From Diadema antillarum (taxonomy: Eukaryota), in assembly GCF_040938485.1 (NCBI RefSeq), contig NW_027271081.1, forward strand, positions 1,364,001 through 1,428,000: DNA of 64,000 nt. Direction: 5' to 3'. The translations under genes were made by a program, and so were the position numbers. The notes under the pieces were generated by a model. That model was not told the DNA's origin. It searched no databases and saw only the letters and a program-made list of their open reading frames with translations. Positions 38,041 through 63,668 of this stretch are shown piece after piece. Each line of letters begins with the position of its first letter. Within the stretch, counting starts at the first letter, position 1.

Positions 38041-39109
38041 CTCTCAAATTTTACATAATCATACTGGTACCTGAAGTGCATGGATGCTATACAGTTCTAC
38101 AAGCATGTACAACAAAAGAGGAACTGCAAGGCATGAAAAGGGCCACTTGTTTTTCTTTGACAAGTTTGTGATTCACCCATGGGACGGGACAGAGAGCAGG
38201 GGTTAAAAATTTCCAATTGTACATGATAGAAACATAAAAGGGGGAAGCACGGAGTGTCATTCACTACCAACACTATTCGCGATGCTTTGACAGTGAAAAC
38301 GCCGTCCTTTACTTGTGGTTTCGTTGTGATTTAGTCGTGCAAAAGTCGTGCTTTTGCACTTACATATTGTCCCCGTGGTTTTGCCGTGATTGCGTTGTGA
38401 TTAGGTGGTGAACGAGTTGTGAAAATGTGCTGGAATCGATGTGATATTACCGTGGATTAGTAGTTGTTACGTCGTGAAAAAGTCGTGCTTTTCGGGCAGA
38501 ACAGTCACCGACATCCTGCCTCGCCCCCTCGCCAGCTAGAGTGACTCTTTTGTTATGCAGCGTGAAAATCGAACAAAAGACACATGCTATTCATGGTGAT
38601 AATCCGCCGATTGTTACATCGGCTTTTGTCCGCAGCTCTAGGGCTCCAAAACCACGACTTTTTCACTACTAGTTCACGGCCGAAGAACGATCAAATCATG
38701 CTGTTTCATAACCCCGTCGCGGGGCGCTGTAACACAGTAACAGCGCCCCGAAGCATCCCATACGATTTTTAGGAAGTACTGCGACGCGTACAATTCTGTC
38801 ACAAACTCACCGTTCAAAACGACACATGGATTCGCAACAAAAAGCCACATGTTGTAATACCATAATGTTGAATATTTTAGCCGACTATGTATTGCTCACC
38901 ATTACCTCCGAAAACAAGAGAAATCGCCATCATCTTTGCTGGAACCCCACTCGACACTATCGACACTGCCGCTCGCCATTTTGAAAATATCACGTAAGTA
39001 AATTGATCTGGGCATGCGCAAATGAATATTCATGGTTACGTCATCTGCCATATATGTACATGTACAATGTTGCTCGTAGTTCTCGGACCATTCGTAGAGT
39101 ATCATCATC

Positions 39110-42100
39110 ATGGAGTTCAAAGATGCTATCAAGGAATTAGAGGAGGAGGCTGGAATTAAGTTTAAAGAGGAGCAGGTAGAAATAATGGAAAGCACAGTGA
39201 AACAGAAGGACACCTTAATGATATTGCCAACTGGGTTTGGCAAGAGCGTTTGTTTTGGTTTCCATCACCGAATCTTGGATAAAGTGAGTATGCAATGGCA
39301 TCAATAAGTACAGTGAAAGTAGCAAACTGAAGCCATACAGGGTACTAGTTATGATTAGATATTTCAAATCATGATAATGATAATCATTATATCACTATCA
39401 TAATCTTATATAATTTATCAAGCAAGGCAGGTTCTGATGACATAATAATATTAAAATATCGATCAATTAAAGCAAGCATGGTTATGAGATAAGGAAAAAT
39501 GATTATTGATTGAACACGAATAGAAAGGCTTAAAAAAGCCATTGCCGGATCAAGCAAGACAGCATCAAAAGAATAAAAATGTGTGAATGGGGTCTACAAT
39601 TTATCTTTCATAGCAATAGGCCTACTGATTAGACATTTATCATCTTACAGTTTAACAATTTGACAAGTTTAACTATTCAACAAAATTCTGTTAATCCTTT
39701 TAATCTAGTTCTATTTGTAGGATAGTGAGATATGTAGGCCCTATATTTTGATCAATAAATTGTTATTTATGATAATCAGCTAAGTTTTTATTTTCAGAAT
39801 AGATATGTCATGTTAGGCCCCATACAGAAATTGAGTATGCATCAACTACATTTTATGACAGATTGAGGCAAGATCATACACTATGAATAATATGAAGAAA
39901 TAGACATGGAAGACTGAATTTAAAATTATCAATGCAGAAACACTTCAGGAGGCACACTGTAACTTCTCATAATTTATTCAGACTTTATCGTCTTTGTAGC
40001 AAAATACAATTCTTCTTATGTACGAATGAAAACTTCGTATAGCTCAAAGTTATATGTAGAATACAGCTGTCTATATATTCACATCTACAAATGTACATTT
40101 CTGTCCTTTTCAATAGATACATCCCAAAAAGCGCCACATAACAATAGTTATTACTCCGCTGAAGAGTTTGATCATCAATCAAGTCATGAAGTGGCGAGAG
40201 GAGGGGGTGTGTGCAGTAGCTCTTTTGCCTGCAAGGGAGATGACTGGAGCTGACACTGAAGGTGAAAAGTCTGCTTATAACAACAACAGCATCCTGCATA
40301 GAAATTTGATGGTCTGAAGCAGTATAAAATCTCATCTTTTTATAAATAAATGAGAAATAGACTTTTCATGCAGAATACACACTTTGATGGGAAACAAGGG
40401 GCCCTGAGGTGAAACATCACATGCCAGACTTCATACACAATGATAAAAAATAGCTGAAATTCACAGATGACTTGTAGATCAATATTGGCTTTCTACAGGA
40501 AAAGAGCTGCACAGAAGAAGAAGCTATATGGTTCCCAAACAAGTCATACACATAATTTCAAGTGAGAAGATATGGCTTCATAATAAACTTATTTGCAACA
40601 CATCGATTCTACACTTTTTGTTTCACATTTCAAAATGATGCTGATGTATGAATAAAAGCTATGAAAATAGAAAGAATCTTTGATAGATTATTGAAACTGT
40701 CTATTTAGACCACTCAGTTAAACTCTCTGTTAAACTTTCTCTGTCTAAAATATTATCAGGTATGAACAAGGCACATTTCCAGTTGATTTTTGCTTCACCG
40801 GAGATCATTACTTCTGGCGTATGGTGGGAGTGGCTCAAGAAACATCGCCAGAACATCTCTCTTGTGGCAGTGGATGAAGTACATTGCCCTTCCAAGTGGT
40901 GAGATAAAGTCCTCTTAATTTCAGACCTACCGAGTATATGAAATTCACAGATAAAATTATCAGATACTGACTGCAAGCAAAGCAAGACAAGTTCACATAC
41001 GCTTTCATGTTCATGTATATGCCCCCATATCAAAACAACTGTTTCCCCATTTCCTGCATTACCCAGGTAGATGATCCTTGGCTAACTGATGCTCGTGTCT
41101 GTCAACCATTATTACAAGAGCAATAAACAGGGCAAACAATGGCAATAAAGAGATATTCTTGGAGTGCCAATCACCCCCACCCCCCCCCAGCATGCCTATG
41201 AGTGGAATACCTTTCATATTACACTAGTTACATTATTCAAAATTAATTTGTAGTCTACTAGTATTACATAGAATCACTGGGGGGGGGGGGAGGAGTGATT
41301 GACACCTTCAGACCCATTGAAAAGTTTATACTTATCAAACATGCAAACATATTTCACATGCAAAAAAAAAAAAAATTCCATGGTCTCAAGAGGGAAAAGG
41401 GAAAACAACCCCTCCCAGACCCTCCCCTTGTCAGCTGATGAAACCCTAAAGTGGCAGCAGAAGTTGCACTGAAGGCCCCCCCCCCTTTTTTTTTTTTTTG
41501 CTTGTTAGCTGGTGAAACCCCGAAGTGGAACCAGAAATGAACTGCCCCTCCCCCATTTTTAAAAACGTGGCGCCAAACCGTCAAAACGCACACCCTCCCC
41601 ATCCCACTCCCCTTGATTAAAGCTGGTGATGATCCTGCTTACCAATCTATCTACTTGATTTGGTTAAAGAGTATGTACATGTACATTTATTTACTCAGGT
41701 AATACAACAGGTCTTAAAGCTTTTATATATATAGATAATTAATTCATGATATTTTGTTTTTATGATTCTAACTAAATCAAGGGGAAAAAGCTTCAGACCA
41801 GACTATCTGAGAGTAGAGAGGTTGCGCAGTATCTTGATGTGTCCATGGATGCTGATTACAGCTACTGCAACAGACCATATGGTTGAAGAAATCCTAGAGC
41901 TTCTCCACATGAAAAGATCACGGATCAACATTTCTGCAACAGTTCCTGACAGGTACACAAATAATTGTTGCTCAATCAATATGCTGAATAATGAGAAAGT
42001 ATCAGTCAAAGAAGATTGATCACAGTATTGCATTAAAAAGTGATAATAGAGTCATGTATAGTGAGGAGCATACATCCTATGTCAGTATGTAGATATTTTT

Positions 42101-47909: not shown

Positions 47910-50900
47910 ATTTGACATCTATCCTCATTACCTGCTACAGGGTCATCTTTGCTGATGTCGACACAGGACTTGTGATACCATTCATGCTTTTTACAGTGCT
48001 CTGCTAGGTGGCATTGCACCATCCCCTCATCTCCAGTCTGACACTTCTTATGGCAGAAGCAGTAGATGTACGAGTCACTGTCTTTACACCCTTGAGAGCA
48101 GTACCAGTCTTCGTCAGAATCTGGTGCCTCTTGGAGTCCCACACAGCTTAAATGGAACCATGCATGTCTACATGTCTTAGAGCAGCACATGACCATTTCA
48201 TCTGACTTCTCTGTTGGTATATAAGCAAACATACAATGGCAAATAAACAAAAAACACTTTAGGGTTATAAAGTGTTTATAGTAACTGTGTGCACAGTTGT
48301 ATGTGAACTGAATTCAACTTGGTATTATCAGATCTTAATATTTACATTTGAAATCATGTCAGCTGTTAATGCTTCAGTAAAATGTTTCATTTTATTTGGA
48401 GAGTGCCACATCACTGCAGTGAGCTTTAATGCCTCGTAAGACAAATATAATAGATTTTAAGTTATTGATATGTAGATTAACAATGAAAATCCTCCCATAA
48501 ATAATTCATAACACACTAGTATATACTGTGGACATGGAAGCTGTATTATCAACCCTTTTTCTCATTAGGCCCATTTCAGTAACTAGGGTAATGAATGGAG
48601 TGTCAACAGTAGGCATTTATGCAATCTGTTGCAATACAAAATGTCACTTCCAATTCCTTCAAGAGCCAGATCCATTCTTGCATCACAGAATATGTTTCTA
48701 CTCGCAGACATGGTAACTAGACAATGATGAGTCACGTTGTCATGGCTATTTCAAAAGAGATGTTCATGAATTTCCTACCATCATATAAGATCTTTCTAGC
48801 CAAACATCAACCATTACACGAATATTCAGATTGAAGTTACCTTTTGTGTTGCAGAAACAGTACCGTAGAGCGTCATCAGGAACATCTCTTAATTTCTGAT
48901 CAAAACCTGCTGCAGCTACTTGCACATCTCCTCGATCTGGCGGAGCCCAGCAGAAGTCCACCACCCGCTGTGATAGATTAGATAGCCACTTGAGCTGTGC
49001 TTCTACATCCTGCTCAGTTGGCAATCCTTTTGGCTGATCCTCTAGTGATGATACTCCGCATAGTTTCATTGCACACAGAACGATGTGTGATTCTGTCACA
49101 AACTAAAACGTTGAATGAGAGAATAAGAAATCTCTGAAACATGGTCTATTGAGAGTGAAACTAAGTAAATGTTATTTAGGATGGAAGGGGCAGGAATGAT
49201 GAGTTAAGTAGCTGAATATCACCCAACGTCCACACATAAAAAAGTAACATAGCCAATCCAAATGCAGTAATTATTTTTTTTCATGAATTGAAATCGTCAC
49301 AATTTCATTTATGTTGCAATTATCAGTTGTATGAGATTACTTAAAAACAACCAAAACTCAGTTGCAGTGAGCATCAACAAATAAAGAATTAGTAGTTCAC
49401 ACAAAGTCTATCATGGATTTATTACCTACACCAAGGAAGGAGGTTATGCTTTTGTCTGTTTTGATTTGTCAGAGTGCAAAATAACTCAAGTTGTCTACAG
49501 ATTTGATGAAACTTTACTCACAGAAAAAGTTGAGAATGTCACAAAAAAACGCTGAAGAGGTAATCACATTTCAGCATTTTTTGTATATTTTTACTTACCT
49601 ATCATTGGGAGTTATATGTGTATAAGTGGAAATGAATTGCTTCGAAGAGGTCTATGCTCTCTGATTCCTTTTCTAGTTTTTGTATTTTCATACAAAAGTT
49701 TATATACACTTATATATACCTTATACAGATCCCAGACATGCTGAAAGTTCTCAACTGCATCTCTCTTGAATGACCTGTGATTGAACTCATTCTTCAGTTG
49801 AGCAATGGTTCCCCTGTCAGCCAGGCTGGATGCTTGGAAGAACTTGTTGTTTGAATCCTGTTTGTATGATAATGATTATGCATAGTTCATATAATAGGCA
49901 CAGCTAGGATTGGGTTTGTAGGTGTTTCATGTTAGTGGCTTTGCCTCCCCAACACACTTTACATGTACAATAAAAGGGAGGCACCCGTGTTGGAAACTGT
50001 CACCCCAATGCAGAGTGTTCAAATCAGATTGCAATTGAACTGAATGTTTAATTATTTCGTATTCATGAATGAACTACCTGTACATGAGGCCCTTTATTTT
50101 TATATGTGGCCTTTGGAAATCTACCATAAATTTCAGAATGAAAGAAAAAAATCCTTTACTTTAACATACCATTACTGCCGTTGTCAAATTGAGCCAATAT
50201 TTTTTTTCTTGTTTTTTTTTAAAGGCAGGTTGTGAATACAAAAGAAATTTTTTGCACACATATTTCTGACTATCTGCATCACTACTTCCATCCCCAAATT
50301 ATCAGTTCCCAGAGTGACCTATATTTCAAAAAAGAAAGGAAGGGAGGAACGAAGGAAGGAAGAAAGAAAGAAAGAAAGAGAAATTGAAGTAATGTTTCTT
50401 GCAAAAGTGATGTATTTAATACTATGATTGCAGACCACAGGCAAGCAACATATGGGAGGGTTAATTTTTGGGCAGACTAGGTATTACAATGTATCTTTTT
50501 TCTCAGAGTGCTTCCTACCCCAGTGGCGGATCCAGAGGGGGCGCAACCAGCACACGCCCCCCCCCTTTAATTTTCATTAGAAACAAAGAAAATAAAAAGG
50601 ATAAAATGAAATGAAACCCAGAAGTGGCAATAGTAATATTAGTCACGCCCCCACCCCCCCCCCCTTTACAGAATTCCGGGATCCGCCCCTGCTACCCTCC
50701 CCTTCTTTAAAATTGCATTCAAACCTACCATATCCCCACAATGATTACTTTAACCCCTCCTTATGATAGAATAGGAATAAACTACAAAAACATGTTTCAA
50801 GGAAGACAAGCACTCCTATTTAATGCACATGCATTGAATAAAAACAATTGTGTTACCATGTTAAATAAAAACTTACACATTGAGATTTCTCATCCATTTC

Positions 50901-53900
50901 AGTAGTATGAGAATGAAGGATTCTGGAGGGAATCTTGTTCTGTAGATGCTTAAGTTGCGTCATGTGCTTGGGTAGCAGGGACTGTACCAGAAAAACTGCT
51001 CTTGCTCTCTGTCGCTCAAACACATCAGGAGATGGAAGGAATGTGTATGGATCAAGACTTGATGCTGGTACTTGTAGAATTGCTGATCCCTCTTTGACTC
51101 GATCTTTGACAGCAAAACACATCGTTTGCAGGAGGAACTTGTTTCCATGTCCTTTCCTCTGATGTTTGGCTTCAGTTCCAACCTGTATGTTGTCAATACA
51201 GAAGCCATAGCTGTATCCGCCGGTGTCCTTGATCGTCTGCTGAGTTTCTGGTTTTTCCTAATAAGCAGAAAGAGGGGAAAAAGTTTGTCTTTCTTTAACC
51301 CAATAAGGCCCAAGCTTATTTTGACCCCTTCCAGGGGGGGGGGGGGGGGCACACATTGTGCTCTATATAATCTTTTTACTATATGATGTATGACTGTCAT
51401 ATTTGGCACTTTATATCAATCATTTTCATTTGCCACAAGTGAAAAGCAAGTAAAACCTTCACTATTTTGTAATGGTTGAAATTTATTAAGGTCAACATGT
51501 GGGGGCGCTATTCATACAAGGTAAAGAAAATAATGCATAAGAGCTACGCTGAATTGCTTGGGATAGTTTTAGATATTTGTATCACATTTCATATTTCCAT
51601 AGTATTGATATTCTTTTGCAGATTTATAATATGATAAACAAATGATGTTAAAGGCAAAACACATAATAATAGGGTAATCTTAAGAAAATGCTGCATTTTC
51701 AATTATTTCCATTATATTTCTTGTTTGATGGCTATGTCACAGCGACCATTGTAGGGTAATTCACAACCATAATTACTTCACTTTTTGGTCCTTCAGCAAA
51801 TTACAGCCAAGAAAACCCCATTTTATCTATTATCATAATTGTTAACTGAAATTGGAACAGAAAATCATGCAAAATCTGACGAACATGGTTGTCAGTTTAT
51901 GGTTGCCCCTGGCAGCTAGTAATACCTGACATAGTTAAATTATATATCAAACTGTTTGCAATAAGATTTTAGGAAAGGTCACCAAATATTGTTGAAATCA
52001 GGTAAAGGGTGTCGGAGTGGCGAACAAAAACATTGTGCCCCCCCCCCCCCCCCTTGGGCTTTATAGGGTTAAAGTGTGCGGATAACAGGGGGGACATGAC
52101 ATTTTCATCTCTTGCTTCTCATCTACAGATGTGTTTATTGGGTGTTGACACTTTAGAGATTCAAAATAATTTTCTTAAAATATTAGTTCTGCAGATCAAG
52201 TACATTTTCCAAGCTTTCTAACAAAATAACCCTTTGAGTAGCATTCTACAACTTTTCACTGAAATAAGTTTGCCCACCTGAGATTCTTTCCACTTCCACA
52301 GTTCATCATCATGTTTCTTCCCAATGATGTCCACATTTCGTCTGGCTGTGTCCGCACTTTGAGATATCCCCATGTGGTTCAATGTGGTGAATACCTTGTG
52401 GCTCACTCGTTGTCTCCAGAGCTCTATCCCAATGCAGGATTGCACAAATTTGTAGATCGGACATTTTGTGTAGAGGACAATTGCAAGTATTTGACCAGCC
52501 TTTCGAGCCAGATCACTGCAAAGAAGATTTATTATATCATTTATAACATCTGTATTACCATTAATGACATAACTTTTTATTACATCACTGTAATTTATGA
52601 AAAATGTGTTTGGTCTTGGTCACTTGTTGCTTGTTCCCAGTAATATTATAGGAAAAGGGAAAAGGATGTGTTTTAAGAACATTAGGCCTATCATTATGAA
52701 CTTGTTCAAACTGGTTATTTTTGTGTTTTATTTTGATATATATGTATGAAAACAGTTGATTGTTACCCGTTGAGACGAAAGAGGAACTTCAGTTTTTTTT
52801 CTTTTGTTAACCAAATACATTTCATACATAAATAGAACATTCTTTTTCACAGAATCTGTTAGCCATCATTTGTGAATATATTTTGATTTGATTTGATGTA
52901 TTTTCCACTTTCAATCAGATACAAATTGAAAACAAATTTCAAAAGCACAAAGACAAAGAACAGCAAGTGCAGTGATATTTAACAATGTAGTGTACAAACA
53001 GATACAAATAAGCAATTGCATTAAGCAGTATATGTGTATACATACACACAAAAACATATTTTTTTCAGTAAATAACAGAGACAATTGAATGCAGGAGACT
53101 GCCATCGTAAGCGATTTAACTTGAAATGGATGGGGCCTCATTAAACTATCCAGTGACACAACTCTAAGATGAAAGTTAGTGCTCAGGTGGATCCAGTTAC
53201 TGTATATAATTCATTCACTCATAATATGTTATATATACACACATCTCTATTATATTGACATTATGTTCAATTATTATGTCTTGTTATGCTGCTATTATAG
53301 GGCCTACCCATAAACAGCCCTCAGGGTTCTCTCCGCAGTTCATAGGTAATTGTCAATAGTGTTGATTTTATCTTACATTATATTTACCTTCTGTTTTCTC
53401 CATTTTTCTTGACTGGCATCATTGCCCAGATGCAGCTTACTGTGGCTGGCATGCTCTGCTCTGCCTCCTCCAAGGCTTTTTCCCAGGAAAATGCAGCAAC
53501 TGTAGTGTGGTTCACTTCTTGCTGAAACGCTTCCAGCTTTGGTTTTGCTTTCATCTGACATTGAAGATGAAGTAACAATCTTTAAATAAATATGCATAAA
53601 TTATTTTCTGCAGAAAATGAAAATCAGGAAGAAAAGCTGTGCTGAATTAAAAGTGTGAAGAAGAATGAAATTACTGTTTCCTTCTTTTCATCTCATTATC
53701 CATCTGTGAAAAGTAAGTGTTTTCTATAGTAAAGGGAGGGTAAAATTTTGTCGTGATGGGGCTTTTGGTTTCCATCGTTTTTATTATGATGAACGGATGC
53801 TGATTCTTTTTTTAGTTAGAATCTCTTTGTGGTTATTTGCGTGTATTCAGTATAATGCGAGTCAAAGCACACCTCGAATACAACTAAACCAACTCTGTTC

Positions 53901-55714
53901 AGCCAAATATCATTACAACCTCAAGTAACAGTAAATGAATGGATAACTAAATAAATAGAATTAAAAAGAAATCCTAATTGAGGTGATAAATATTATTTAC
54001 ATATTTTATGGCTCGGTCACAAAAAAAAAAAAAAAAATTGATATCAAGATAAGAACTGCTACGAACGTAAGTTCGGATCCTGGTCGATGATCTAATGCAA
54101 AGGTTTTTTGTTTTGTTTTGTTTTGTTTTTTAACTTCGTGAAAACCCCACTCTTCGTAAGGTGGCCATTATTATGAACCTCAGAATTCGTATACGAACAG
54201 TGACATTCGTACGAGCGCTTCGTTCCAACGAACTTTTCAGTGACCCGATAGATGGCAAACTTAGTTGTTACGATTTCAGTGATCACCCCTCCCCCCTCCC
54301 CCCCCCAAAAAAAAAAAAAAAAAAAATGGAGAAAAAAGTAATTCCGAGGGTGAACATGTTGTGGGTACCTAGCTGCTGGTGATGAAAGAACTAATAGGCC
54401 CATATTTTGTGACCCGCTCCAACAAAAAGATCCAGAAGTCGTCGGAGGATTTTCTTAAAATGACATGACATTATCCCCTTACTCTCCTGCTTTAAGTTCG
54501 TATATAACAAGACTAATTAAAGTACTTGGTTGCGGAGATATCAATGATTTTATGAGACCATGTCGACTGAGTGGTCTAAGAAAAGCTAAGAAATCAGCGT
54601 TTTGAGAAAACCGCGCCTTCAATGTTTGTTTTGTTCTTTTTTTATCCCCCGATACATGCCATGCACGGATCGATAAGATCACTCCCTCGTTGCTAGGGGC
54701 GGGGCCTTTCTGCGGCGCTAAATCTAAATCGTCGGACACTTCTGTTCAGTTGAAAGTCGCAAAATCAGGGCCAAGAAAAATTCTACTCTCTTGCCTTTCC
54801 TTTAATCATTTAGCGTCGAAATTTCGGCAGATGATAGACGATATATTAGACTACAAAACCATGTCAAAAACGGAAATTTGATAGTTTTGGCCGATTTTGA
54901 CGATCTGACGTTAAACACAATTTTCTCGGCTCAGCCGTCAGCGATTCTAGAATCCTTTCGTTGTGGCAAGTCATATTTATTCTTAAATTGATATTAACAG
55001 CGATAATAATTCTACTACTAATAAATATAATATACTGTATGCAGCAGCGTCATAATTGTGATGTTAACACATAGGCCTAAGAATGAAAACAGCGTACCTC
55101 ATTTTTGATCATCTCTGCTGCGGCAGTAATCACTGCTCGCTTTGCGGGTGCAGAGTTCTTGGACATTGTCCGGATGCCCAGCAAATACCGATATGATTTT
55201 ATAAACCCCACTGCTTTCTCTAGTGGTGTTGGCATAGAATCATCGGGATCCCCGGATGCACGCTCTTCTCCTTCTCCTTCTCCTTCTCCTTCTCCTTCTT
55301 CATCTTCCTCTTCATCGCTTGCTTCACATCCAGTGTTCTCAGCTTGACTTCCTCCAACATTGAAATCAAGCTGCTCTGTTTGACTTGTGGATATCTGTTT
55401 TTGTGGGGTCGCAAAAAGGGCCCTCTTTTTTGCCTTGGGGGTTGGGGATACTGGCTCCTTATTCTCGCGTAGTTGACTTCTCGGAGGGCGCCGACGAGCA
55501 GTCCGTTTTTCCCTCGTTTCATAGTGTTTCGGAATATTTCGGTGCGGCATTTAGTGCACACAAAATTGTCTAGGTATACAGTCCTGCCACAAAGCTTGAA
55601 GGCTGTACCCGGAGATGTCACAATTGTGGCAAGTCTAGATCGATTGTACCCCTTCAGTCCTTTTTCAAATAAAGTCATGCACATAGCACATCTCGATGGA
55701 TCAAAATGAGCCAT
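44004..55714 (-). CDS. Academ-type transposase with two PHD fingers; disrupted (1-nt frameshift, central core apparently missing)
   Basis: Exons 55714-55098, 53554-53388, 52515-52278, 51257-50877, 49857-49720, 49102-48841, 48210-47932, 47086-46859, 46288-46157, 44365-44004, all GT-AG. They are phase-consistent if 1 nt is restored in exon 1 (about 934 aa). Motifs FSWEKALEE, LNHMGISQS, FCIDNIQ, AVKDRV, DRGTIAQLKN, AVREGDG..WK, HPKY, WNRVAN..GGNIGLDLVNE and PGREH match Academ transposases. Confidence 0.82.
47876..47907. repeat. (CA)n microsatellite in a transposase intron
   Basis: Uninterrupted CA run. Confidence 0.85.
50521..50691. mobile_element. MITE nested in a transposase intron
   Basis: CAGTGGCGGATCC...GGATCCGCCCCTG TIRs flanked by the direct repeat CTACCC (50515-50520, 50692-50697). 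Confidence 0.6.
51295..52072. mobile_element. piggyBac-like non-autonomous element nested in a transposase intron
   Basis: TTAA-CCCAATAAGGCCC...GGGCTTTATAGGG-TTAA. Confidence 0.65.
54406..54977. mobile_element. Unclassified element with imperfect TIRs of about 35 bp in transposase intron 1
   Basis: Left TGTGACCCGCTCCAACAAAAAGATCCAGAAGTCG versus right reverse complement TATGACTTGCCACAACGAAAGGATTCTAGAATCG; CpG-richer than the flanks. Confidence 0.4.
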
Positions 55715-56475
55715 GACTCCGTCCAGCGGTTAAGAGAAAAAGGGGGAAAAGAGAGACAGGCTTTACCCTGCGTGCTCAGAAAAGTTTTCCCGCCATCGTG
55801 TGCAGCTTTGGTCAGAGCGACGAACTTAGCTGATCTCATACAGCCTAGAAACACGAGGAGGGAGCGCAAAAGTTACGCAAGTGTGGATTTACACCTGGGG
55901 AACGCATGCACGTGGTTAGTCAAGCCTAAGGCGGTTAGCACATACTGAATATGTGACAGGAAAAAAACATAAATGTCGCAATGATGAAAACGGTATACCC
56001 CGCTCTTCCAAAACTGTCTATACACAACATATTGCCAATGTGAGGTGGTTTCATGACAAGCAAATAATCACACTCTGCAGTCTGTACGTACACCAATTTT
56101 CATGACAATAATACTTTCAGCCATTCTTAAAAGGTAGACGGAAAAAAGTGACATTTTGGCGTTTCATCTAGACTTTCAACTCAGAGCGGAAATATTTCCC
56201 GTATCGTATCATTTTGTCCAGAATATGTTCAAATTAGTCCATAAACATCTGTCAATGTCTAAGGTACATGTTTGTGTGGATAAATTAGCTTAATTTCACA
56301 GTTCTATAGGTATAATCTTTGCATTATAAACTGACTATTGACACTTGAACTTTGTCTTAATGACATAAACCTCTCGGGAAAATCATCAAGCAATACATGT
56401 ATATGTGCTGTTTTATTAAGGATGTCTTGAGCATTTTTCAAAATATTATTATGTACATTATAACTATATATATAA

Positions 56476-56521
<46 letters not shown>

Positions 56522-58493
56522 TACGTGTATGGTGCAAAATGTTTACCTTTGATCTTTAGCCCATTGCATGGCCTCAAACTTTATTTATTATATGCAGAAT
56601 CAACCTTTACCTGATAATACTTTCAATGTGTACATGTAGTTTCATGAAAATAAATTCAGAAATTGTACATGTTGATATATATAGAGATGTTGGGAAAATG
56701 ATGGACTTGTAGTATAACCTTGACCTAAGATCATTGCCTCTGATAGGCACAGCATATTAGTGCACTCATACAGTGTGCATGTAAGTGACACTGGGCTTGC
56801 ATTATTGTCACCTTCCCTCCCCAGGTATATAGTATCACGATCATGAGAATGAGTACTAGGGACATGACATAATAATTTAGTGCTTATTTTATTCCTAATG
56901 CGAATGAGAAGGAAGAGAATAAGTGTATGAATATGCTTGTACATTACCATCACCAATACATAAAAGGTGTAATCACACACTCGTATGTATAAATAACAAT
57001 ATCAATATGAAGCTATAATTGAGTGTATAGTGTTATTAGATATAGTGTCGATAATAGTGCAAAAAAAGACACTAAATGTTTTGAAAATGACATATATATA
57101 GGGAGCAGTGGAATACAATCCCCATGACCATATGGATGGATCTGAAAGGGTTACTTTCTAGTTTTTCATTAACCAATCCATCATACCGTTAAGATGAAAG
57201 CCAGTCTAAAACTTTATCTATATTTCATGAGAATGAAAAAAAAAAATCCAGGAGAACACTGCAAAAATGATAAAATCAGATTAAAAAAAAAAAGGAAATA
57301 ATGACATTCTGATATAAAAATTTCGGAAGACACTCCTTGTCCCGTTGCTATGAATGAATGAATGAATGAATGAAGAAAATGAAGGACTACTCAGAGTCAA
57401 CTTTATTGATCTGTATATCACAGTACATAGAAATTTAGCTTCCAGTTCATCCAACTTGTTACACACAAATAATCATTAAACACACATGCGTGCAGACACA
57501 CACACACAATCAAACAGCAAGTGACATGCCCGAAAGAAAAAGACAGGAAAGGATTCCCATACGGTGGAAGTCTTTGAAAAAAGAAAGGTCTCTTTAATAA
57601 ATAATCAAACAATCCTGAAACATTGAAAATAGACAAGACATGTATGTAACAGAAGTGTATTCAAATCAAATCACAGCAGATAATAAACATGAAGCAAAAA
57701 TGAATATGAGTCCCCAAGAAGCAGAGCTTGTGAGTGGAGCCCATTGTGAATGTACAACATTTTACAGTGTGAAAGGAAACTTGATTTATAGATGAGACAT
57801 CTGGGACATTGCCCCTGCAGACTGGGAAAAAACAAATAAATAAAGAAACAAACAAAGAAACAAACATACCCTCTATCATGAAAATCACCTGTTATTTTCT
57901 TAATCCGTCATATCTCCAGATGTTCATTATGTGTGCACTTCCTTTATTGCAAATAAATAATGAACCACACATTCAAAATGTGCTTTAAAAACGAAATTAA
58001 TAAGTGCCGGTAGGCCCGATAGTAAATCAGCGCCCAACATGCGTTCTTTTTTGTTACATCTCATGAATATTCATTTCAGATCTCAGCGAGCCGTCCGGGT
58101 TTTTTTCCACACGCATACATTGCGTATTATAGTATGTGCTACGTTTTATCCATATTCGCGCATGCGCTGTGTAAGTCGTACCACAATACGAAATGCGGTA
58201 GGACTTTAAAACCCTCGGATAAACTCTTTCACAGGGCTCTCAAAACAGATCATATTGTAAATCGACTTCGCCTGCTGTGATTGTAAGTATCTTATCTAAG
58301 AGTAAGGCTACAAATTTCAGTATAAAACCCTGTATTTTGGTCTCTGGTCACCTAAATGCTAAGCCATATCAGGTGCTTCCGTGACAGGATAGGCCTTGCG
58401 GTGCGACCCCTTTACGGTACGTATTTGTCCGTATGGGGTCGCTGCTGCGGTTAGGGCTACTCTGTACTCTAACGTTACTAAATACTATCATGA

Positions 58494-60210: not shown

Positions 60211-60653
60211 AAAAAAAATACGTTCCTCTTTTTTCCCGGCCAAAAGGTGGCGCTAGTCTGAGAGGAGTCACAATGCCATGGCACTTAGCACTGAGCTGAG
60301 GTGAGTGGCCGGCCAGCTGGCCGGCTGGCTATGCAGTACCTAGATTTAGCGCGCTACGCTGGCGCGGAAGCGACGCGAGGCGAGCTAGCAGTCGACGGTC
60401 CTCGCCTCGGCCTCACTCACATGCACGCTCGTGCCGTTACATGCATACTACATCGTAACTATACACAGCCCAGTCGCTGTACATGGTACGTCGCGCTGTT
60501 TTCGCATAGCGTAACAGCGTCTGGTCGGGCTAACTACATCGAGAATCTACGCCTGACTTGCTGAATAATTAACGTGTGTTTTACAACGCTTTTCAACAGC
60601 GATGTTGTGGGGTAAGTTTGATGTCTGACTTCTTGTGATCGACATGCTAATTT

Positions 60654-62771
60654 TGGTAATCATGTAGAAATGCACACCTACCGTTCGCTTCGCCGTTTGT
60701 CAATAAAATTTTGTGCAGCTCTTGGAGATGCTAAATTGAACCATATCAGAGAGTTTTCATAGAATTAGAAAGCCGAAAAGGGAAGAAAAATTAGAAATCG
60801 GAGTTGAAAAGTACGTCGGTCGCGATCATAGTTCCGACGTAGTAAGTAGTGCATCGATTTCACAGAGAACGGTGTCAACGATTATAATCGATTCTGGTAG
60901 TCTCTAATTAGCTGCTTACTAACAATATTAACACGACTTGTGCAATACGTGTGGGCCCTAGATCTACTTTCATTTTCGTATTTTTTCTCATTCTTTTCAT
61001 TGCCATTATCATGATTATCACTATTTAAATCATTGATACAGATTATTCATACCAGGATTTAGACATCCTTTCTTTAGAAATTGTGGCAAGTATTGATTTT
61101 ATCATGACAAAAGTTGATGATTTAATTTGAATAGTGTTGAAGGGAAAATAATGAGGTTGAAGGAAAAGTGGAAGAAAAGAGTAAGGCTATTAGAAGGAGG
61201 GAGAGAGAGAAAGAGAGAGAAAAGAAGATGAGGAGGAAGTTGAATTCGAAGGGGATTTGTTGTTTGTGGTGATGGTAAATGGTATTAAATTTATGTTTTT
61301 AATTGATAAGTTCAATTTATAGTATAAATTATTGTTTTACTGATAATTACGCTATTCGTTTTTCCATTTCATTTTATTAATTATGTATACAAGAACTGCA
61401 ACCCCAATATTTGCTTTTGTTTCGTAGTAAGGTCCATTTTATTATCTTTTATTGTTTTGTACACATATTATCCTCCCAACATTCAGTCAGCAAAATATGT
61501 TGACAGATACAATGTTTGTATACAGTCAAACGCAGCACGCAGGAGAAAATTAACTAAAACAACAAAAAACAGACGCATCGAGATCACTTTCTTTCTTCAA
61601 CTTTTTACTGTTAAGCCGACGTAATTATTGTGGTTAAACACCAAACAAGCGGCTGTATCACAGACTACAACGATCGATCATCATCATTATATCGCTTTTC
61701 CATATAATCGATCATCAAACATGCTACGCTGATACAGCCGTCGATCGGCGTACTTTTGAGTCAAAATTAGCTACTTTTCTTCTGTAATTGGCTATGAAAT
61801 TTCATGAAACCATCAGATATGGTTCATCTTGACATTTCTGATAGCCACGAAAAGTTTTTATTGACAAATTAAGGAAGGAAATGGTAGGTGTGCATTTCTA
61901 CATGATTACCGAAAAGCGATATAACGATGATAATCGATCGTTGTAGTCTGTGATACAGCCGCTTGTTTGGTGTTTAACCAAAATAATTACGTCGGCTCGA
62001 CAGTAAAATGTGGAAGAAAGAAAGTGATCTTGATGCGTCTGTTTTTTATCGTTTTAGTTCATTTTCTCCTGCGTGTGACTGTATATCTGTCATTATTTTT
62101 TGCTGACTAAATGATGGACAGATAATATGCGTAACGTTACAAAACAGTAAAAGATATATGAAAAAATGGGAATTAAAATATCCATCATGAATATTGCACA
62201 ATAAAATGGATTTTTTAATACAAAACAAAAGCAAATACTGGGGTTGCAGTTTTTGCGATGTACACATAATTTTAAAAAAATGAAATGGAAAAATAAATAC
62301 TATCATTAAAACAATTACTTTCTACTATAAGTTGAACTATCAATCTTACCATTTCAATTTCAATATTCTGTTTCTTTTTGCAGATAGGTAAATTGAGCAC
62401 TTTATAAGAAGTCCATAATACTAATACATCATTGTATAACATACGCTTTTTGTAATACTATTCTCATTAATGTATTAAATTAGGCCTATAAATTATGTAG
62501 ATTACTAGAAACAAATCCCCTTTGAATTCAACTTCCTTCTCATCTTCTTTTCTCTCTCTTTTTCTTCCACTTTTCCTTCAACCTCATTCTATTCCCTTTG
62601 ACACTATTCAAATTGAATTATTATTATCAACTTTTGTCATGATAAAATCAATACTTGCCACAATTTTTAAAGAAAAGGATCAATGTCTTAATCCTGGTAT
62701 GAATAATCGTATCAATAATTTGAATTGTGATAATCATGATAGTGGCAATGAAAACAAAGAACTATCACAAT

Positions 62772-62804
<33 letters not shown>

Positions 62805-63150
62805 CAATAAGAAAAAAAATACGAAAAAGAAAGTAGGGGCTACACGTATTGCACGAGTCAAGTTCGATATTGTTAGTAAGCGGCTAATTAGAGACTACCA
62901 GAATCGATTATAATCGTTGACATCGTTCTCTGCGAATCGGCGGTGCACTACTTTACACGTCGGAGCGCGGAGACTATGTTCGCGACCGACGTACTTTTCA
63001 ACTTCGATTTCTCATTTTTCTTACCTTTTCGGCTTTCTAATTCCATGAAAACTCTCTGATATGGTTCAGTTTAGCATCTCCAATAGCTGCACAAAATTTG
63101 ATTGACAAACGGCGAAGCGAACGGTAGGTGTGCATTTCTACATGATTACC
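60654..63150. repeat. Large imperfect inverted repeat (foldback-like), about 2.5 kb
   Basis: 60654-60958 is the inverse of 62836-63150, and 61330-61700 is the inverse of 61913-62310. The 28-mer GGTAATCATGTAGAAATGCACACCTACC occurs at 60654 (+), 61885 (-) and 63123 (-). Confidence 0.8.
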
Positions 63151-63668
63151 CAGATTCTCACGATTGCACTTACACGCACGTAAATTTGTGATCCTATGCA
63201 TAATACACGCACAGCTAGCACACAGCACGCAATTGCACACAGTCCACGCACAGGCGACGCGTCGCTGTTCAGGTAAACCTGCTCGCGCCCAAGCCAGGGG
63301 AAATTGCGGCTGGTGATTGGCTTAGAGTAAACACATGACAGGGGAATTCTCAATTTCTATTGGCCTAGCCAAATGCGTTTAATTATGTATTCACTCGGAA
63401 TTCACTCGGCTTAATTTTCACTCGGAATTCACTCGGCGAATGGGTTTCACACAAATGTCACTCGTTACATGAGTGAAATTCACTCGACAACGAGTGAAAG
63501 TCACTCTTAATTGAGTGAAATTTTATTCACTCCTTCCGAGGAGTGAATTATTCACTCGAAATTTTCTAGAGAGTACATATGCCCCTGAGTATGGAAATGC
63601 ACGTCTGGCTGGTCATCGGTGGTGGGTGTGGCCAGGAGGGCCACAAAAAGGACCCCCCAAAAATTACG

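What the first reader, a model, noticed from the sequence alone, without database searches (positions are those of the whole stretch)
38270..55950. AcademHP-like transposon: convergent RecQ helicase and double-PHD transposase beside or inside WDR26
Seen: a 6-exon RecQ-like helicase (+) and a 10-exon transposase (-) that can only be recovered by splicing; the ORF track shows just fragments. Known: Academ transposons with helicase (AcademH) and with helicase plus PHD fingers (AcademHP) have this arrangement, but the helicase's role in transposition is not established. Inference: this is an intron-rich member spanning at least 17 kb, possibly an undescribed family.
Basis: partly seen in the sequence, partly recalled or inferred. 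Interest (0 to 1): 0.8.

Follow-up and report, generated by a model that had tools for sequence, protein, structure and literature searches.

The report
Helicase-carrying AcademH transposon, sea urchin
This is a real, recently active 20-kb jumping gene of the sea urchin Diadema antillarum that carries a cutting enzyme with two histone-reading PHD fingers and its own RecQ-type helicase. It belongs to a known kind of transposon, and the copy in this window has a broken cutting enzyme.

Summary
A 6-exon, 429-codon RecQ-like helicase (+) converges on a 10-exon DUF6589/double-PHD transposase (-); their stop codons lie 2 nt apart.

It is a mobile element, not a host gene pair. Three near-identical copies (99.5-99.9%) in assembly GCA_040938485.1 share exactly about 20.07 kb and have different flanks. 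The true ends are 38709 (TAACC...) and 58453 (...GGTTA), not 38270-55950.

- **Target-site duplications:** 9-10 bp, as published for AcademH.
- **Gene linkage:** the same convergent pair, with all six helicase exons, occurs in a second Diadema family, in Strongylocentrotus purpuratus (complete copy, 321-bp inverted repeats, 9-bp duplication) and in Priapulus.
- **Damage in this copy:** a 312-bp deletion removes the exon with the second catalytic Asp, and a 1-nt deletion frameshifts exon 1. The helicase is intact.
- **Likely composite:** its flanks do not pair, and its right flank pairs with the left flank of a copy 2.86 Mb away.

Direct comparison with Repbase Academ entries was not possible. 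This scan already met the family on other DNA of this genome (s1-215020).

Verdict: a new member of a known kind, of modest interest. The conserved subterminal hairpins deserve a follow-up.

The parts
38709..58453 (.). Whole element (19,745 bp here; 20,067 bp in copies L001 and L002). Termini are 5'-TAACC...GGTTA-3'.
   Evidence: L001 and L002 share exactly this stretch at 99.7% and differ on both sides. The window is 100% identical to L005 of GCA_040938485.1.
38709..38750 (+). Left terminus: TAACCCCGTCG followed by an 11-bp GC-rich perfect palindrome that starts 11 nt from the end.
   Evidence: Folds at -15.8 kcal/mol, z -4.4, 0 of 200 shuffles as good. The scan found it as well.
58394..58453 (-). 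Right terminus: TAACCGCAGCA followed by an 8-bp GC-rich palindrome that starts 11 nt from the end.
   Evidence: Folds at -14.9 kcal/mol, z -4.7, 0 of 200 shuffles as good.
39110..39283 (+). Helicase exon 1 (motif 0 and motif I, PTGFGKS).
   Evidence: Best PDB match is E. coli RecQ residues 16-64. Donor GTGAGT in phase 0.
40117..40261 (+). Helicase exon 2 (motif Ia).
   Evidence: Splice sites and phase. Conserved in L006, L007 and L008.
40718..40898 (+). Helicase exon 3 (motif II, DEVH).
   Evidence: Matches WRN residues 112-162. Splice sites.
41782..41952 (+). Helicase exon 4 (motif III, TATAT).
   Evidence: Splice sites. Conserved in L006-L008.
42724..42846 (+). Helicase exon 5.
   Evidence: Splice sites. 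Conserved in L006-L008.
43506..44001 (+). Helicase exon 6 (motifs IV-VI, QEVGRAGRDG; C-terminal Cys cluster; stop codon at 43999-44001).
   Evidence: Pfam Helicase_C at 3e-15. WRN and RecQ at 4e-19.
44004..44363 (-). Transposase last exon, with its stop codon at 44004-44006, 2 nt from the helicase stop.
   Evidence: Exact map of P0152. Gene ranges.
46155..46286 (-). Transposase exon.
46857..47087 (-). Transposase exon: end of the second PHD finger, the invariant D612 and the REGDG motif.
   Evidence: Pfam DUF6589 at 0.02 on the exon alone. It retrieved 308 relatives. Conservation columns.
47933..48211 (-). Transposase exon with the first PHD finger and most of the second.
   Evidence: Invariant C4HC3 residues. 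Fold matches ING PHD fingers at Z 5.3-6.0 with 33-44% identity.
48842..49102 (-). Transposase exon (helical insertion domain).
49720..49857 (-). Transposase exon.
50307..50308 (.). Site of a 312-bp deletion relative to L001 and L002. It removes the 252-nt exon (P0002 residues 286-369) that carries the GDGLT motif with the second catalytic Asp (D327).
50877..51257 (-). Transposase exon with the first catalytic Asp (CIDNIQ, D180).
   Evidence: D180 lies in strand beta-1 of the model.
52278..52517 (-). Transposase exon.
53390..53545 (-). Transposase exon.
55092..55714 (-). Transposase exon 1 (CxxC...CxxC N-terminus and an acidic tract). It is frameshifted here by a 1-nt deletion near 55505 and is an intact 211-codon ORF in L001 and L002.
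58454..58463 (.). The 10 bp GGGCTACTCT right of the element. It is identical to the 10 bp left of copy L001, so one target-site duplication is split between two copies.
38211..38708 (.).
   Evidence: Word depth is 12-20 times that of the unique flank. Other copies of this repeat continue after 38708 with GTGCTTCTGGAGCG....
36164..36379 (-). First WD40 exon of WDR26 (context); further exons run down to 30063.

Best explanation
An autonomous-type AcademH DNA transposon of Diadema antillarum.

What it encodes:
- A DDE/D transposase with an RNase-H-like core. The candidate catalytic residues are D180, D327 and the invariant D612. Two ING-like PHD fingers sit in the insertion domain between the second and third catalytic residues.
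- On the opposite strand, a minimal RecQ-like SF2 helicase.

How it most likely works:
- Shown: it exists as several near-identical 20-kb copies at different sites. It ends in TAACC...GGTTA and makes 9-10-bp target-site duplications.
- Inferred: it moves by cut-and-paste. The transposase recognises the TAAC terminus plus a GC-rich subterminal hairpin 9-11 nt inside each end.
- Inferred: the helicase opens or resolves these structured ends, or the staggered target.
- Inferred: the PHD fingers tether the complex to H3K4-methylated chromatin.

The copy in the window cannot make a working transposase, because the exon with D327 is deleted and exon 1 is frameshifted, but it keeps an intact helicase. 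As assembled, it is probably a join of two genomic copies: the WDR26-side copy on the left, up to about 43-46 kb, and a degenerate copy on the right.
For: Transposase family and fold:
- P0002 hits DUF6589 at 5e-31.
- The AF2 model has pLDDT 77.5. D180 lies in strand beta-1 and D327 directly follows beta-4.
- The best structural matches are DDE transposases: P element Z 8.8 over 323 residues, Hermes Z 6-6.8, ISCth4 Z 5.8, HIV integrase core Z 5.2.
- The PHD fingers match ING3/4/5 at Z 5.3-6.0.

Helicase: RecQ/WRN are the best hits for exons 1, 3 and 6, in collinear order. The reading frame is intact in all three copies.

Mobility:
- L001 and L002 share 20.07 kb at 99.7% and their flanks differ.
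- A 10-bp duplication, GGGCTACTCT, pairs the window's right flank with L001's left flank.
- Two 347-bp derivatives have the same kind of ends and perfect 9-bp duplications.
- The S. purpuratus relative has 321-bp perfect inverted repeats and a 9-bp duplication.
- The published AcademH duplication length is 9-10 bp (PMC10045372).

Hairpins: found at all six ends tested, at the same distance from the end and with different sequences.

Composite copy:
- The pattern of single-base differences is a mosaic between copies.
- The left flank plus the left 7 kb is identical in two contigs that then diverge.
Against: - No direct comparison with Repbase or Dfam Academ consensus sequences was possible. No held paper links DUF6589 to Academ.
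- The structural Z-scores are modest and Foldseek E-values are not significant.
- No RNA run holds the element, so splicing rests on homology, splice signals and NCBI gene models.
- None of the three assembled copies has a matching duplication on its own two flanks.
- The roles proposed for the helicase, the hairpins and the PHD fingers are inference only.
Confidence: 0.85

Rival explanations
1. The flank mismatch is real biology. Ectopic recombination, or alternative ('reversed-ends') transposition using the right end of one copy and the left end of another, rearranged about 2.86 Mb between two copies on the same chromosome. The window's copy would then be a true recombinant.
For: The window copy and L001 lie on the same contig, in the same orientation, 2.86 Mb apart. 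The window copy's right end and L001's left end carry the same 10-bp duplication. That is the footprint expected when two facing ends insert together into one target.
Against: - L002 also has unmatched flanks.
- L002 shares an identical left flank plus 7 kb of the element with the window and then diverges. This is what an assembler produces when it takes different exits from a 20-kb repeat at 99.9% identity.
- Three independent rearrangements would be needed instead of one technical cause.
Confidence: 0.12
2. A domesticated, immobile host gene pair derived from an old transposon.
For: NCBI annotates the genes as ordinary 'uncharacterized proteins'. Relatives in Lytechinus keep long ORFs but have lost D180.
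Against: - In D. antillarum there are at least three 20-kb copies at 99.5-99.9% identity with different flanks, defined termini and 9-10-bp duplications.
- High-copy short derivatives exist.
- The catalytic residues are kept in L001 and L002.
Confidence: 0.02
3. A helicase-carrying element of another superfamily (for example KolobokH, or a P-like element) rather than Academ.
For: The best structural match is the P element transposase. The Academ label rests on indirect features.
Against: - The duplication is 9-10 bp and the termini are TAAC. From my own knowledge, Kolobok makes 4-bp TTAA and P elements make 8-bp duplications.
- The Pfam family is DUF6589, not a THAP/P or Kolobok profile.
- The PHD-bearing, helicase-linked architecture matches the published AcademH description.
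Confidence: 0.05

Closest known systems
AcademH lineage of Academ DNA transposons (Kojima 2020, Mob DNA 11:15; not held in the paper library, cited through PMC10045372 and PMC10799480). From my memory of that paper, it includes an animal sublineage with a PHD finger in the transposase.
   Same: Two genes (transposase plus SF2 helicase with DEAD/Helicase_C domains), 9-10-bp target-site duplications, PHD finger(s) in the transposase, low copy number, presence in animals.
   Different: Nothing defining differs. Features seen here that I cannot check against the paper are:
- 17 exons, with the six-exon helicase structure conserved from echinoderms to a priapulid;
- stop codons 2 nt apart;
- very short inverted repeats in Diadema (TAACC only), against 321 bp in the S. 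purpuratus relative;
- GC-rich subterminal hairpins at a fixed distance from every end.
RecQ-family helicases (E. coli RecQ, human WRN, RECQL, RECQL4, RECQL5)
   Same: Motifs 0-VI in collinear order, including PTGxGKS, DExH and QExGRAGRDG. A C-terminal Cys cluster sits where the RecQ zinc-binding subdomain lies.
   Different: Only 429 residues. No winged-helix RQC or HRDC domain was detected. It is encoded inside a transposon.
Eukaryotic DDE transposases with an insertion domain (P element 6pe2, Hermes hAT 8sjd, RAG1)
   Same: RNase-H-like core. The acidic residues lie on beta-1, after beta-4 and on the helix after a large inserted domain.
   Different: Sequence identity is 8-9% only. The insertion domain here carries two PHD fingers.
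ING-type PHD fingers (ING1-5, Yng2), which read H3K4me3
   Same: 33-44% identity and Z 5.3-6.0 over the whole finger. The C4HC3 ligands are invariant.
   Different: Embedded in a transposase. Histone binding has not been tested.

Membership tests
Academ superfamily / AcademH lineage | Transposase homologous to the Academ transposases of Repbase | not testable with these tools
   No Repbase or Dfam library is on hand, and Kojima 2020 is not held. The only proxy is Pfam DUF6589 at 5e-31. No held paper links DUF6589 to Academ.
Academ superfamily / AcademH lineage | A second gene encoding an SF2 helicase | tested here: met
   A six-exon RecQ-like helicase is convergent with the transposase in the window, L001, L002, L006, L007 and L008.
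Academ superfamily / AcademH lineage | Target-site duplication of 9 or 10 bp (PMC10045372, citing Kojima 2020) | tested here: met
   - 10 bp, GGGCTACTCT, pairs the window's right flank with L001's left flank.
- 9 bp at two 347-bp derivatives: CTCTAGACC and GATAATGAC.
- 9 bp, GGGGTAAGC, at the S. purpuratus relative.

Caveat: no assembled Diadema copy has the pair on its own two flanks.
Academ superfamily / AcademH lineage | PHD finger in the transposase (animal sublineage) | tested here: met
   Two C4HC3 sets are invariant in 16 relatives. The fold matches ING PHD fingers.
DDE/D transposase (RNase-H-like) | RNase-H-like fold with three acidic residues at the canonical positions | tested here: inconclusive
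   Model pLDDT is 77.5. D180 lies on beta-1, D327 follows beta-4, and the invariant D612 starts the helix after the insertion. The top structural hits are transposases, but Z is only 5-8.8 and Foldseek E is at least 0.05.
RecQ helicase family | Helicase core with RecQ-type motifs 0-VI | tested here: met
   RecQ, WRN, RECQL and BLM are the best PDB hits for exons 1, 3 and 6, in order.
RecQ helicase family | RQC (zinc-binding plus winged-helix) and HRDC domains | tested here: not met
   Pfam shows no RQC or HRDC hit on any exon. Only a Cys cluster (C-x24-CC-x2-C) is seen at the C-terminus. It is RecQ-like, not a canonical full RecQ.
Domesticated host gene | A single fixed locus without termini or target-site duplications | tested here: not met
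   There are at least three copies with different flanks and defined ends. Word depth of the interior is about 2-3 times that of the unique flank, and of the left 0.8 kb about 17-20 times (depth is only indicative).

The most novel reading that the evidence does not exclude
The ends of this AcademH family may be defined by structure rather than by sequence. Every end examined has TAAC(C/T) followed by a perfect GC-rich palindrome of 8-12 bp that starts 9-11 nt from the tip. This holds for both ends of the 20-kb element, both ends of its 347-bp derivatives, and the ends of the S. purpuratus relative. The palindrome sequence differs each time. If so, the element's RecQ-like helicase would exist to extrude, bind or resolve these hairpins during end recognition or cleavage. 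That would give the unexplained helicase of AcademH (and perhaps KolobokH) elements a testable job.
Probability: 0.25. Interest if true: 0.6.

Novelty: new member of a known kind. Interest (0 to 1): 0.3.

Why it matters
It documents a young, essentially intact AcademH element in an animal. Copies L001 and L002 have complete transposase and helicase reading frames and are 99.7% identical to each other. That is useful raw material for the first functional test of what the helicase does in this superfamily.

It also carries a practical warning. The 20-kb near-identical copies appear to have misled the assembly, swapping flanks between copies. They have also produced truncated or chimeric gene models: WDR26 and LETM1 models that start inside the element.

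As a genome-scan finding it is otherwise ordinary. The kind is published, and the same family was already reported from another window of this genome.

Tried and rejected
an inverted-repeat and duplication search around 38270 and 55950 found nothing convincing. The true ends came only from comparing copies.
- **Pfam on single exons:** only Helicase_C was significant; DUF6589 reached 0.02 on one exon.
- **Word search with the PHD exon:** one hit, a 121-aa fragment.
- **Kojima 2020:** could not be read by PMC id or DOI. No held paper connects DUF6589 with Academ.
- **Foldseek on the whole 835-residue model:** no match at E of 0.001 or better.
- **Rfam:** no RNA family in 36-60 kb.
- **RNA evidence:** no RNA run holds the element. 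All runs were contigs, so no splice or expression evidence was obtained, and no listed contig bridges the 38708/38709 junction.
- **Partner flank of the WDR26-side junction:** expected to start GCTGTTTCA GTGCTTCTGG; it is not in any fetched locus.
- **Ends of the L006 and L008 relatives:** not found.
- **P0035:** has no gene on record.
- **Horizontal transfer to 'organism B':** considered because the element is about 98% identical there while nothing on the WDR26 flank reaches 95%. I do not claim it, because the tool itself warns that contigs of conserved genes are silently filtered.
Full report
**What is there**

The window is 100% identical over 30 kb to locus L005 of GCA_040938485.1, contig JBFRCO010000193.1. 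The sources name the proteins of that assembly as Diadema antillarum.

On the + strand, six ORF pieces carry the RecQ-type helicase motifs in order. With GT/AG borders and consistent phases they give exons 39110-39283, 40117-40261, 40718-40898, 41782-41952, 42724-42846 and 43506-44001, which is 429 codons.

- Exon 6 matches Pfam Helicase_C at 3e-15.
- Searched separately against PDB sequences, exons 1, 3 and 6 each hit RecQ-family chains best (E. coli RecQ, WRN, RECQL, BLM) at collinear positions.
- No RQC or HRDC domain was detected, so this is a minimal RecQ-like helicase.

**The transposase**

Single exons of the minus-strand gene barely score in Pfam; DUF6589 reached 0.02 for exon 46851-47153. 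I therefore searched that exon alone against the representative protein library. This returned 308 relatives, including P0002 (835 aa, 99% identical).

P0002 and the other full-length relatives hit DUF6589 at up to 5e-31. The annotated protein of this very locus, P0152 (879 aa), maps exactly onto ten exons between 55550 and 44007.

An alignment of 16 relatives shows two invariant C4HC3 PHD fingers (P0002 residues 497-544 and 553-604). The conserved acidic residues are D180 (CIDNIQ), D327 (SGDGLT) and the invariant D612.

An AlphaFold model of P0002 (pLDDT 77.5) puts D180 on strand beta-1 and D327 directly after beta-4. D612 sits at the start of the helix that follows a large inserted domain containing the PHD fingers.

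- Foldseek gave no significant match.
- On the second-look alignment the best chains are DDE transposases: P element Z 8.8 over 323 residues, Hermes Z 6-6.8, ISCth4 Z 5.8, HIV integrase core Z 5.2.
- The PHD fingers match ING1-5 fingers at Z 5.3-6.0 and 33-44% identity.
- These Z values are modest. They support, but do not prove, an RNase-H-like transposase.

The two genes converge. The helicase stop is at 43999-44001 and the transposase stop at 44004-44006, so their 3' ends must overlap.

**It is mobile, and where it really ends**

P0002 is encoded at two further places in the same assembly, L001 and L002, each followed by the convergent helicase. L001 and L002 share exactly about 20.07 kb at 99.7% and differ on both sides. 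Against the window the shared stretch is 38709-58453. The element therefore ends in TAACCCCGTCGCG... on the left and ...GCTGCGGTTA on the right.

Public contigs show 12-20 times the flank's word depth over 38.2-38.7 kb. Other copies of that repeat continue past 38708 with GTGCTTCTGGAGCG..., which is an empty site.

Evidence on target-site duplications:

- The 10 bp right of the window copy (GGGCTACTCT, 58454-58463) equals the 10 bp left of the L001 copy.
- Two 347-bp derivatives in L001's flanks have TAACC/TAGCC...GTTA ends and perfect 9-bp duplications, CTCTAGACC and GATAATGAC.
- The S. purpuratus relative (L007 9531-23731, 14,201 bp) has 321-bp perfect inverted repeats beginning TAACTCC and a perfect 9-bp duplication, GGGGTAAGC.
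- Published AcademH elements make 9-10-bp duplications (PMC10045372).

Word depth is only indicative. It suggests a handful of full-length copies (interior about 2-3 times the flank) and many short derivatives that share the left 0.8 kb (about 17-20 times). Contigs also exist in which the first 31-36 bp of the left end run straight into right-end sequence.

**Linkage elsewhere**

All six helicase exons lie convergent, directly downstream of a DUF6589 gene, in three further loci. These are L006 (a second D. antillarum family, 49% identical transposase; the helicase is annotated with DEAD and Helicase_C), L007 (S. purpuratus) and L008 (Priapulus caudatus). Remnants are seen in D. setosum (L003) and L. 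variegatus (L004).

**State of the copy in the window**

Relative to L001 and L002, the window lacks 312 bp at 50307/50308. This removes the 252-nt exon for P0002 residues 286-369, including D327, and the flanking exons still join in frame. A 1-nt deletion near 55505 frameshifts exon 1, which is an intact 211-codon ORF in L001 and L002. The helicase is intact in all three copies. As assembled, this copy therefore cannot move by itself.

**A caveat on the assembly**

None of the three contigs has a matching duplication on its own two flanks.

- The window and L002 share an identical left flank (no base substitutions in 4.7 kb) and are identical from 38709 to 46759 apart from one base (45499). 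They differ beyond that point and have different right flanks.
- The differences private to L001 cluster at 40.9-42.7 kb. The window's private differences, mostly 1-nt indels plus the 312-bp deletion, cluster right of 50.3 kb. The two are identical at 46.8-50.0 kb, where L002 differs.
- The simplest reading is that one degenerate genomic copy, with the duplication GGGCTACTCT, is split between L001 (its left part) and the window (its right part). The window's left part would then belong to the WDR26-side copy.
- This would be an assembler switching paths inside a 20-kb repeat. A real recombination or alternative-transposition event is not excluded.

Because of this, whether the element sits in a WDR26 intron cannot be settled. 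WDR26's WD40 exons (30063-36379, minus strand) lie 2.3 kb from the left end, and no LisH/CTLH exons are seen in the window. The annotated 384-aa 'WD40' protein starts at 39111, inside the element.

**Structured ends**

Six ends were folded: the two ends of the 20-kb element and the two ends of each of the two 347-bp derivatives. All show the same layout. TAAC(C/T) or TAGC comes first, then a perfect GC-rich palindrome starting 10-11 nt from the tip, with a different palindrome sequence at each kind of end. Z-scores run from -2.6 to -5.7, and four of the six were matched by 0 of 200 shuffles. The two derivatives are near-identical, so they count as one kind. The S. purpuratus ends were not folded, but the palindrome scan found the same layout there, with the stem at position 9. 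This may bear on what the helicase does, but that link is inference.

**Comparison and verdict**

Every defining feature of AcademH that I could test is met: the helicase gene, 9-10-bp duplications and the PHD finger. Direct homology to Repbase Academ transposases could not be tested. This scan has already described a 20-kb, 17-exon copy with a 9-bp duplication elsewhere in this genome (s1-215020), as well as relics (s1-224567).

This is a new member of a known kind. It is of modest interest, and the structured ends and the flank swap are worth a note.

**Limits and instructions followed**

Exons were searched one by one by reference, and full-length analyses used database proteins only. No stretch of N occurs in the window, and no contig was taken for human.

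Noticed in passing
window 38709-38750 and 58394-58453; L001 6344-6403, 6631-6690, 26899-26958 and 27186-27245; L007 9531 and 23731: Every transposon end has TAAC followed by a perfect GC-rich palindrome that starts 9-11 nt from the tip. The palindrome sequence differs at each kind of end, so the structure is conserved but the sequence is not.
   Followed up: partly
window 58454-58463 versus L001 26767-26776; both lie on contig JBFRCO010000193.1, 2.86 Mb apart: One 10-bp target-site duplication is split between two copies. No assembled copy has matching flanks. The pattern of single-base differences is a mosaic between copies. This is either an assembly path switch in a 20-kb repeat or a real rearrangement.
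   Followed up: partly
window 39111 (minus strand); L001 1-9460: The annotated WDR26-like protein (384 aa) starts inside the element, next to the helicase ATG. In L001 a LETM1 gene model reaches 2.76 kb into the other end and starts next to the transposase ATG. These are chimeric or truncated gene models at both ends. The cause could be outward transcription or an annotation artefact.
   Followed up: no
window 36640-38040: A separate, extremely abundant repeat with word depth of 1e4-1e5. It contains 3.5 tandem units of 323 bp, an (ACGGACG)12 tract and GCTCACCTGAG-type inverted ends. It lies between WDR26 and the element.
   Followed up: no
window 60649-63156: A fold-back element with long, nearly perfect inverted arms (184 nt at 95% and further matching segments) surrounding about 2 kb.
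   Followed up: no
P0005, P0153, P0156 (Lytechinus variegatus and L. pictus); L004: The Lytechinus relatives keep ORFs of 1004-1107 aa and the PHD fingers. They have lost D180 (DN replaced by SR) and part of the GDGLT motif. In L004 only a fragment of the helicase remains downstream. They are either candidates for domestication or decaying copies.
   Followed up: no
Read-laying run X4 (organism B), window 38715-42000: A second organism label holds the element, introns included, at about 98% identity. Nothing reaching 95% was laid on the WDR26 flank at 36.0-36.6 kb. This could be recent shared activity, transfer between species, or only the tool's silent filtering of conserved genes.
   Followed up: no
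window 38739 and 38744 (loose ends in runs X2 and X4): Contigs in which the first 31-36 bp of the left end run directly into right-end sequence (...GTACGTATTTGTCCGTATGGG...). These are miniature derivatives consisting of the two ends only, or excision products.
   Followed up: no
window 43999-44006: The stop codons of the two convergent genes are 2 nt apart, so their 3' untranslated regions must overlap in antisense. This could be a source of double-stranded RNA.
   Followed up: no
L007 9531-23731 (S. purpuratus GCA_000002235.4, AAGJ06000003.1): A complete relative of 14,201 bp with 321-bp perfect inverted repeats and the 9-bp duplication GGGGTAAGC. It has a transposase with D180 and GDGLT kept and all six helicase exons. 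It lies in an intron of an RrnaAD methyltransferase gene.
   Followed up: partly
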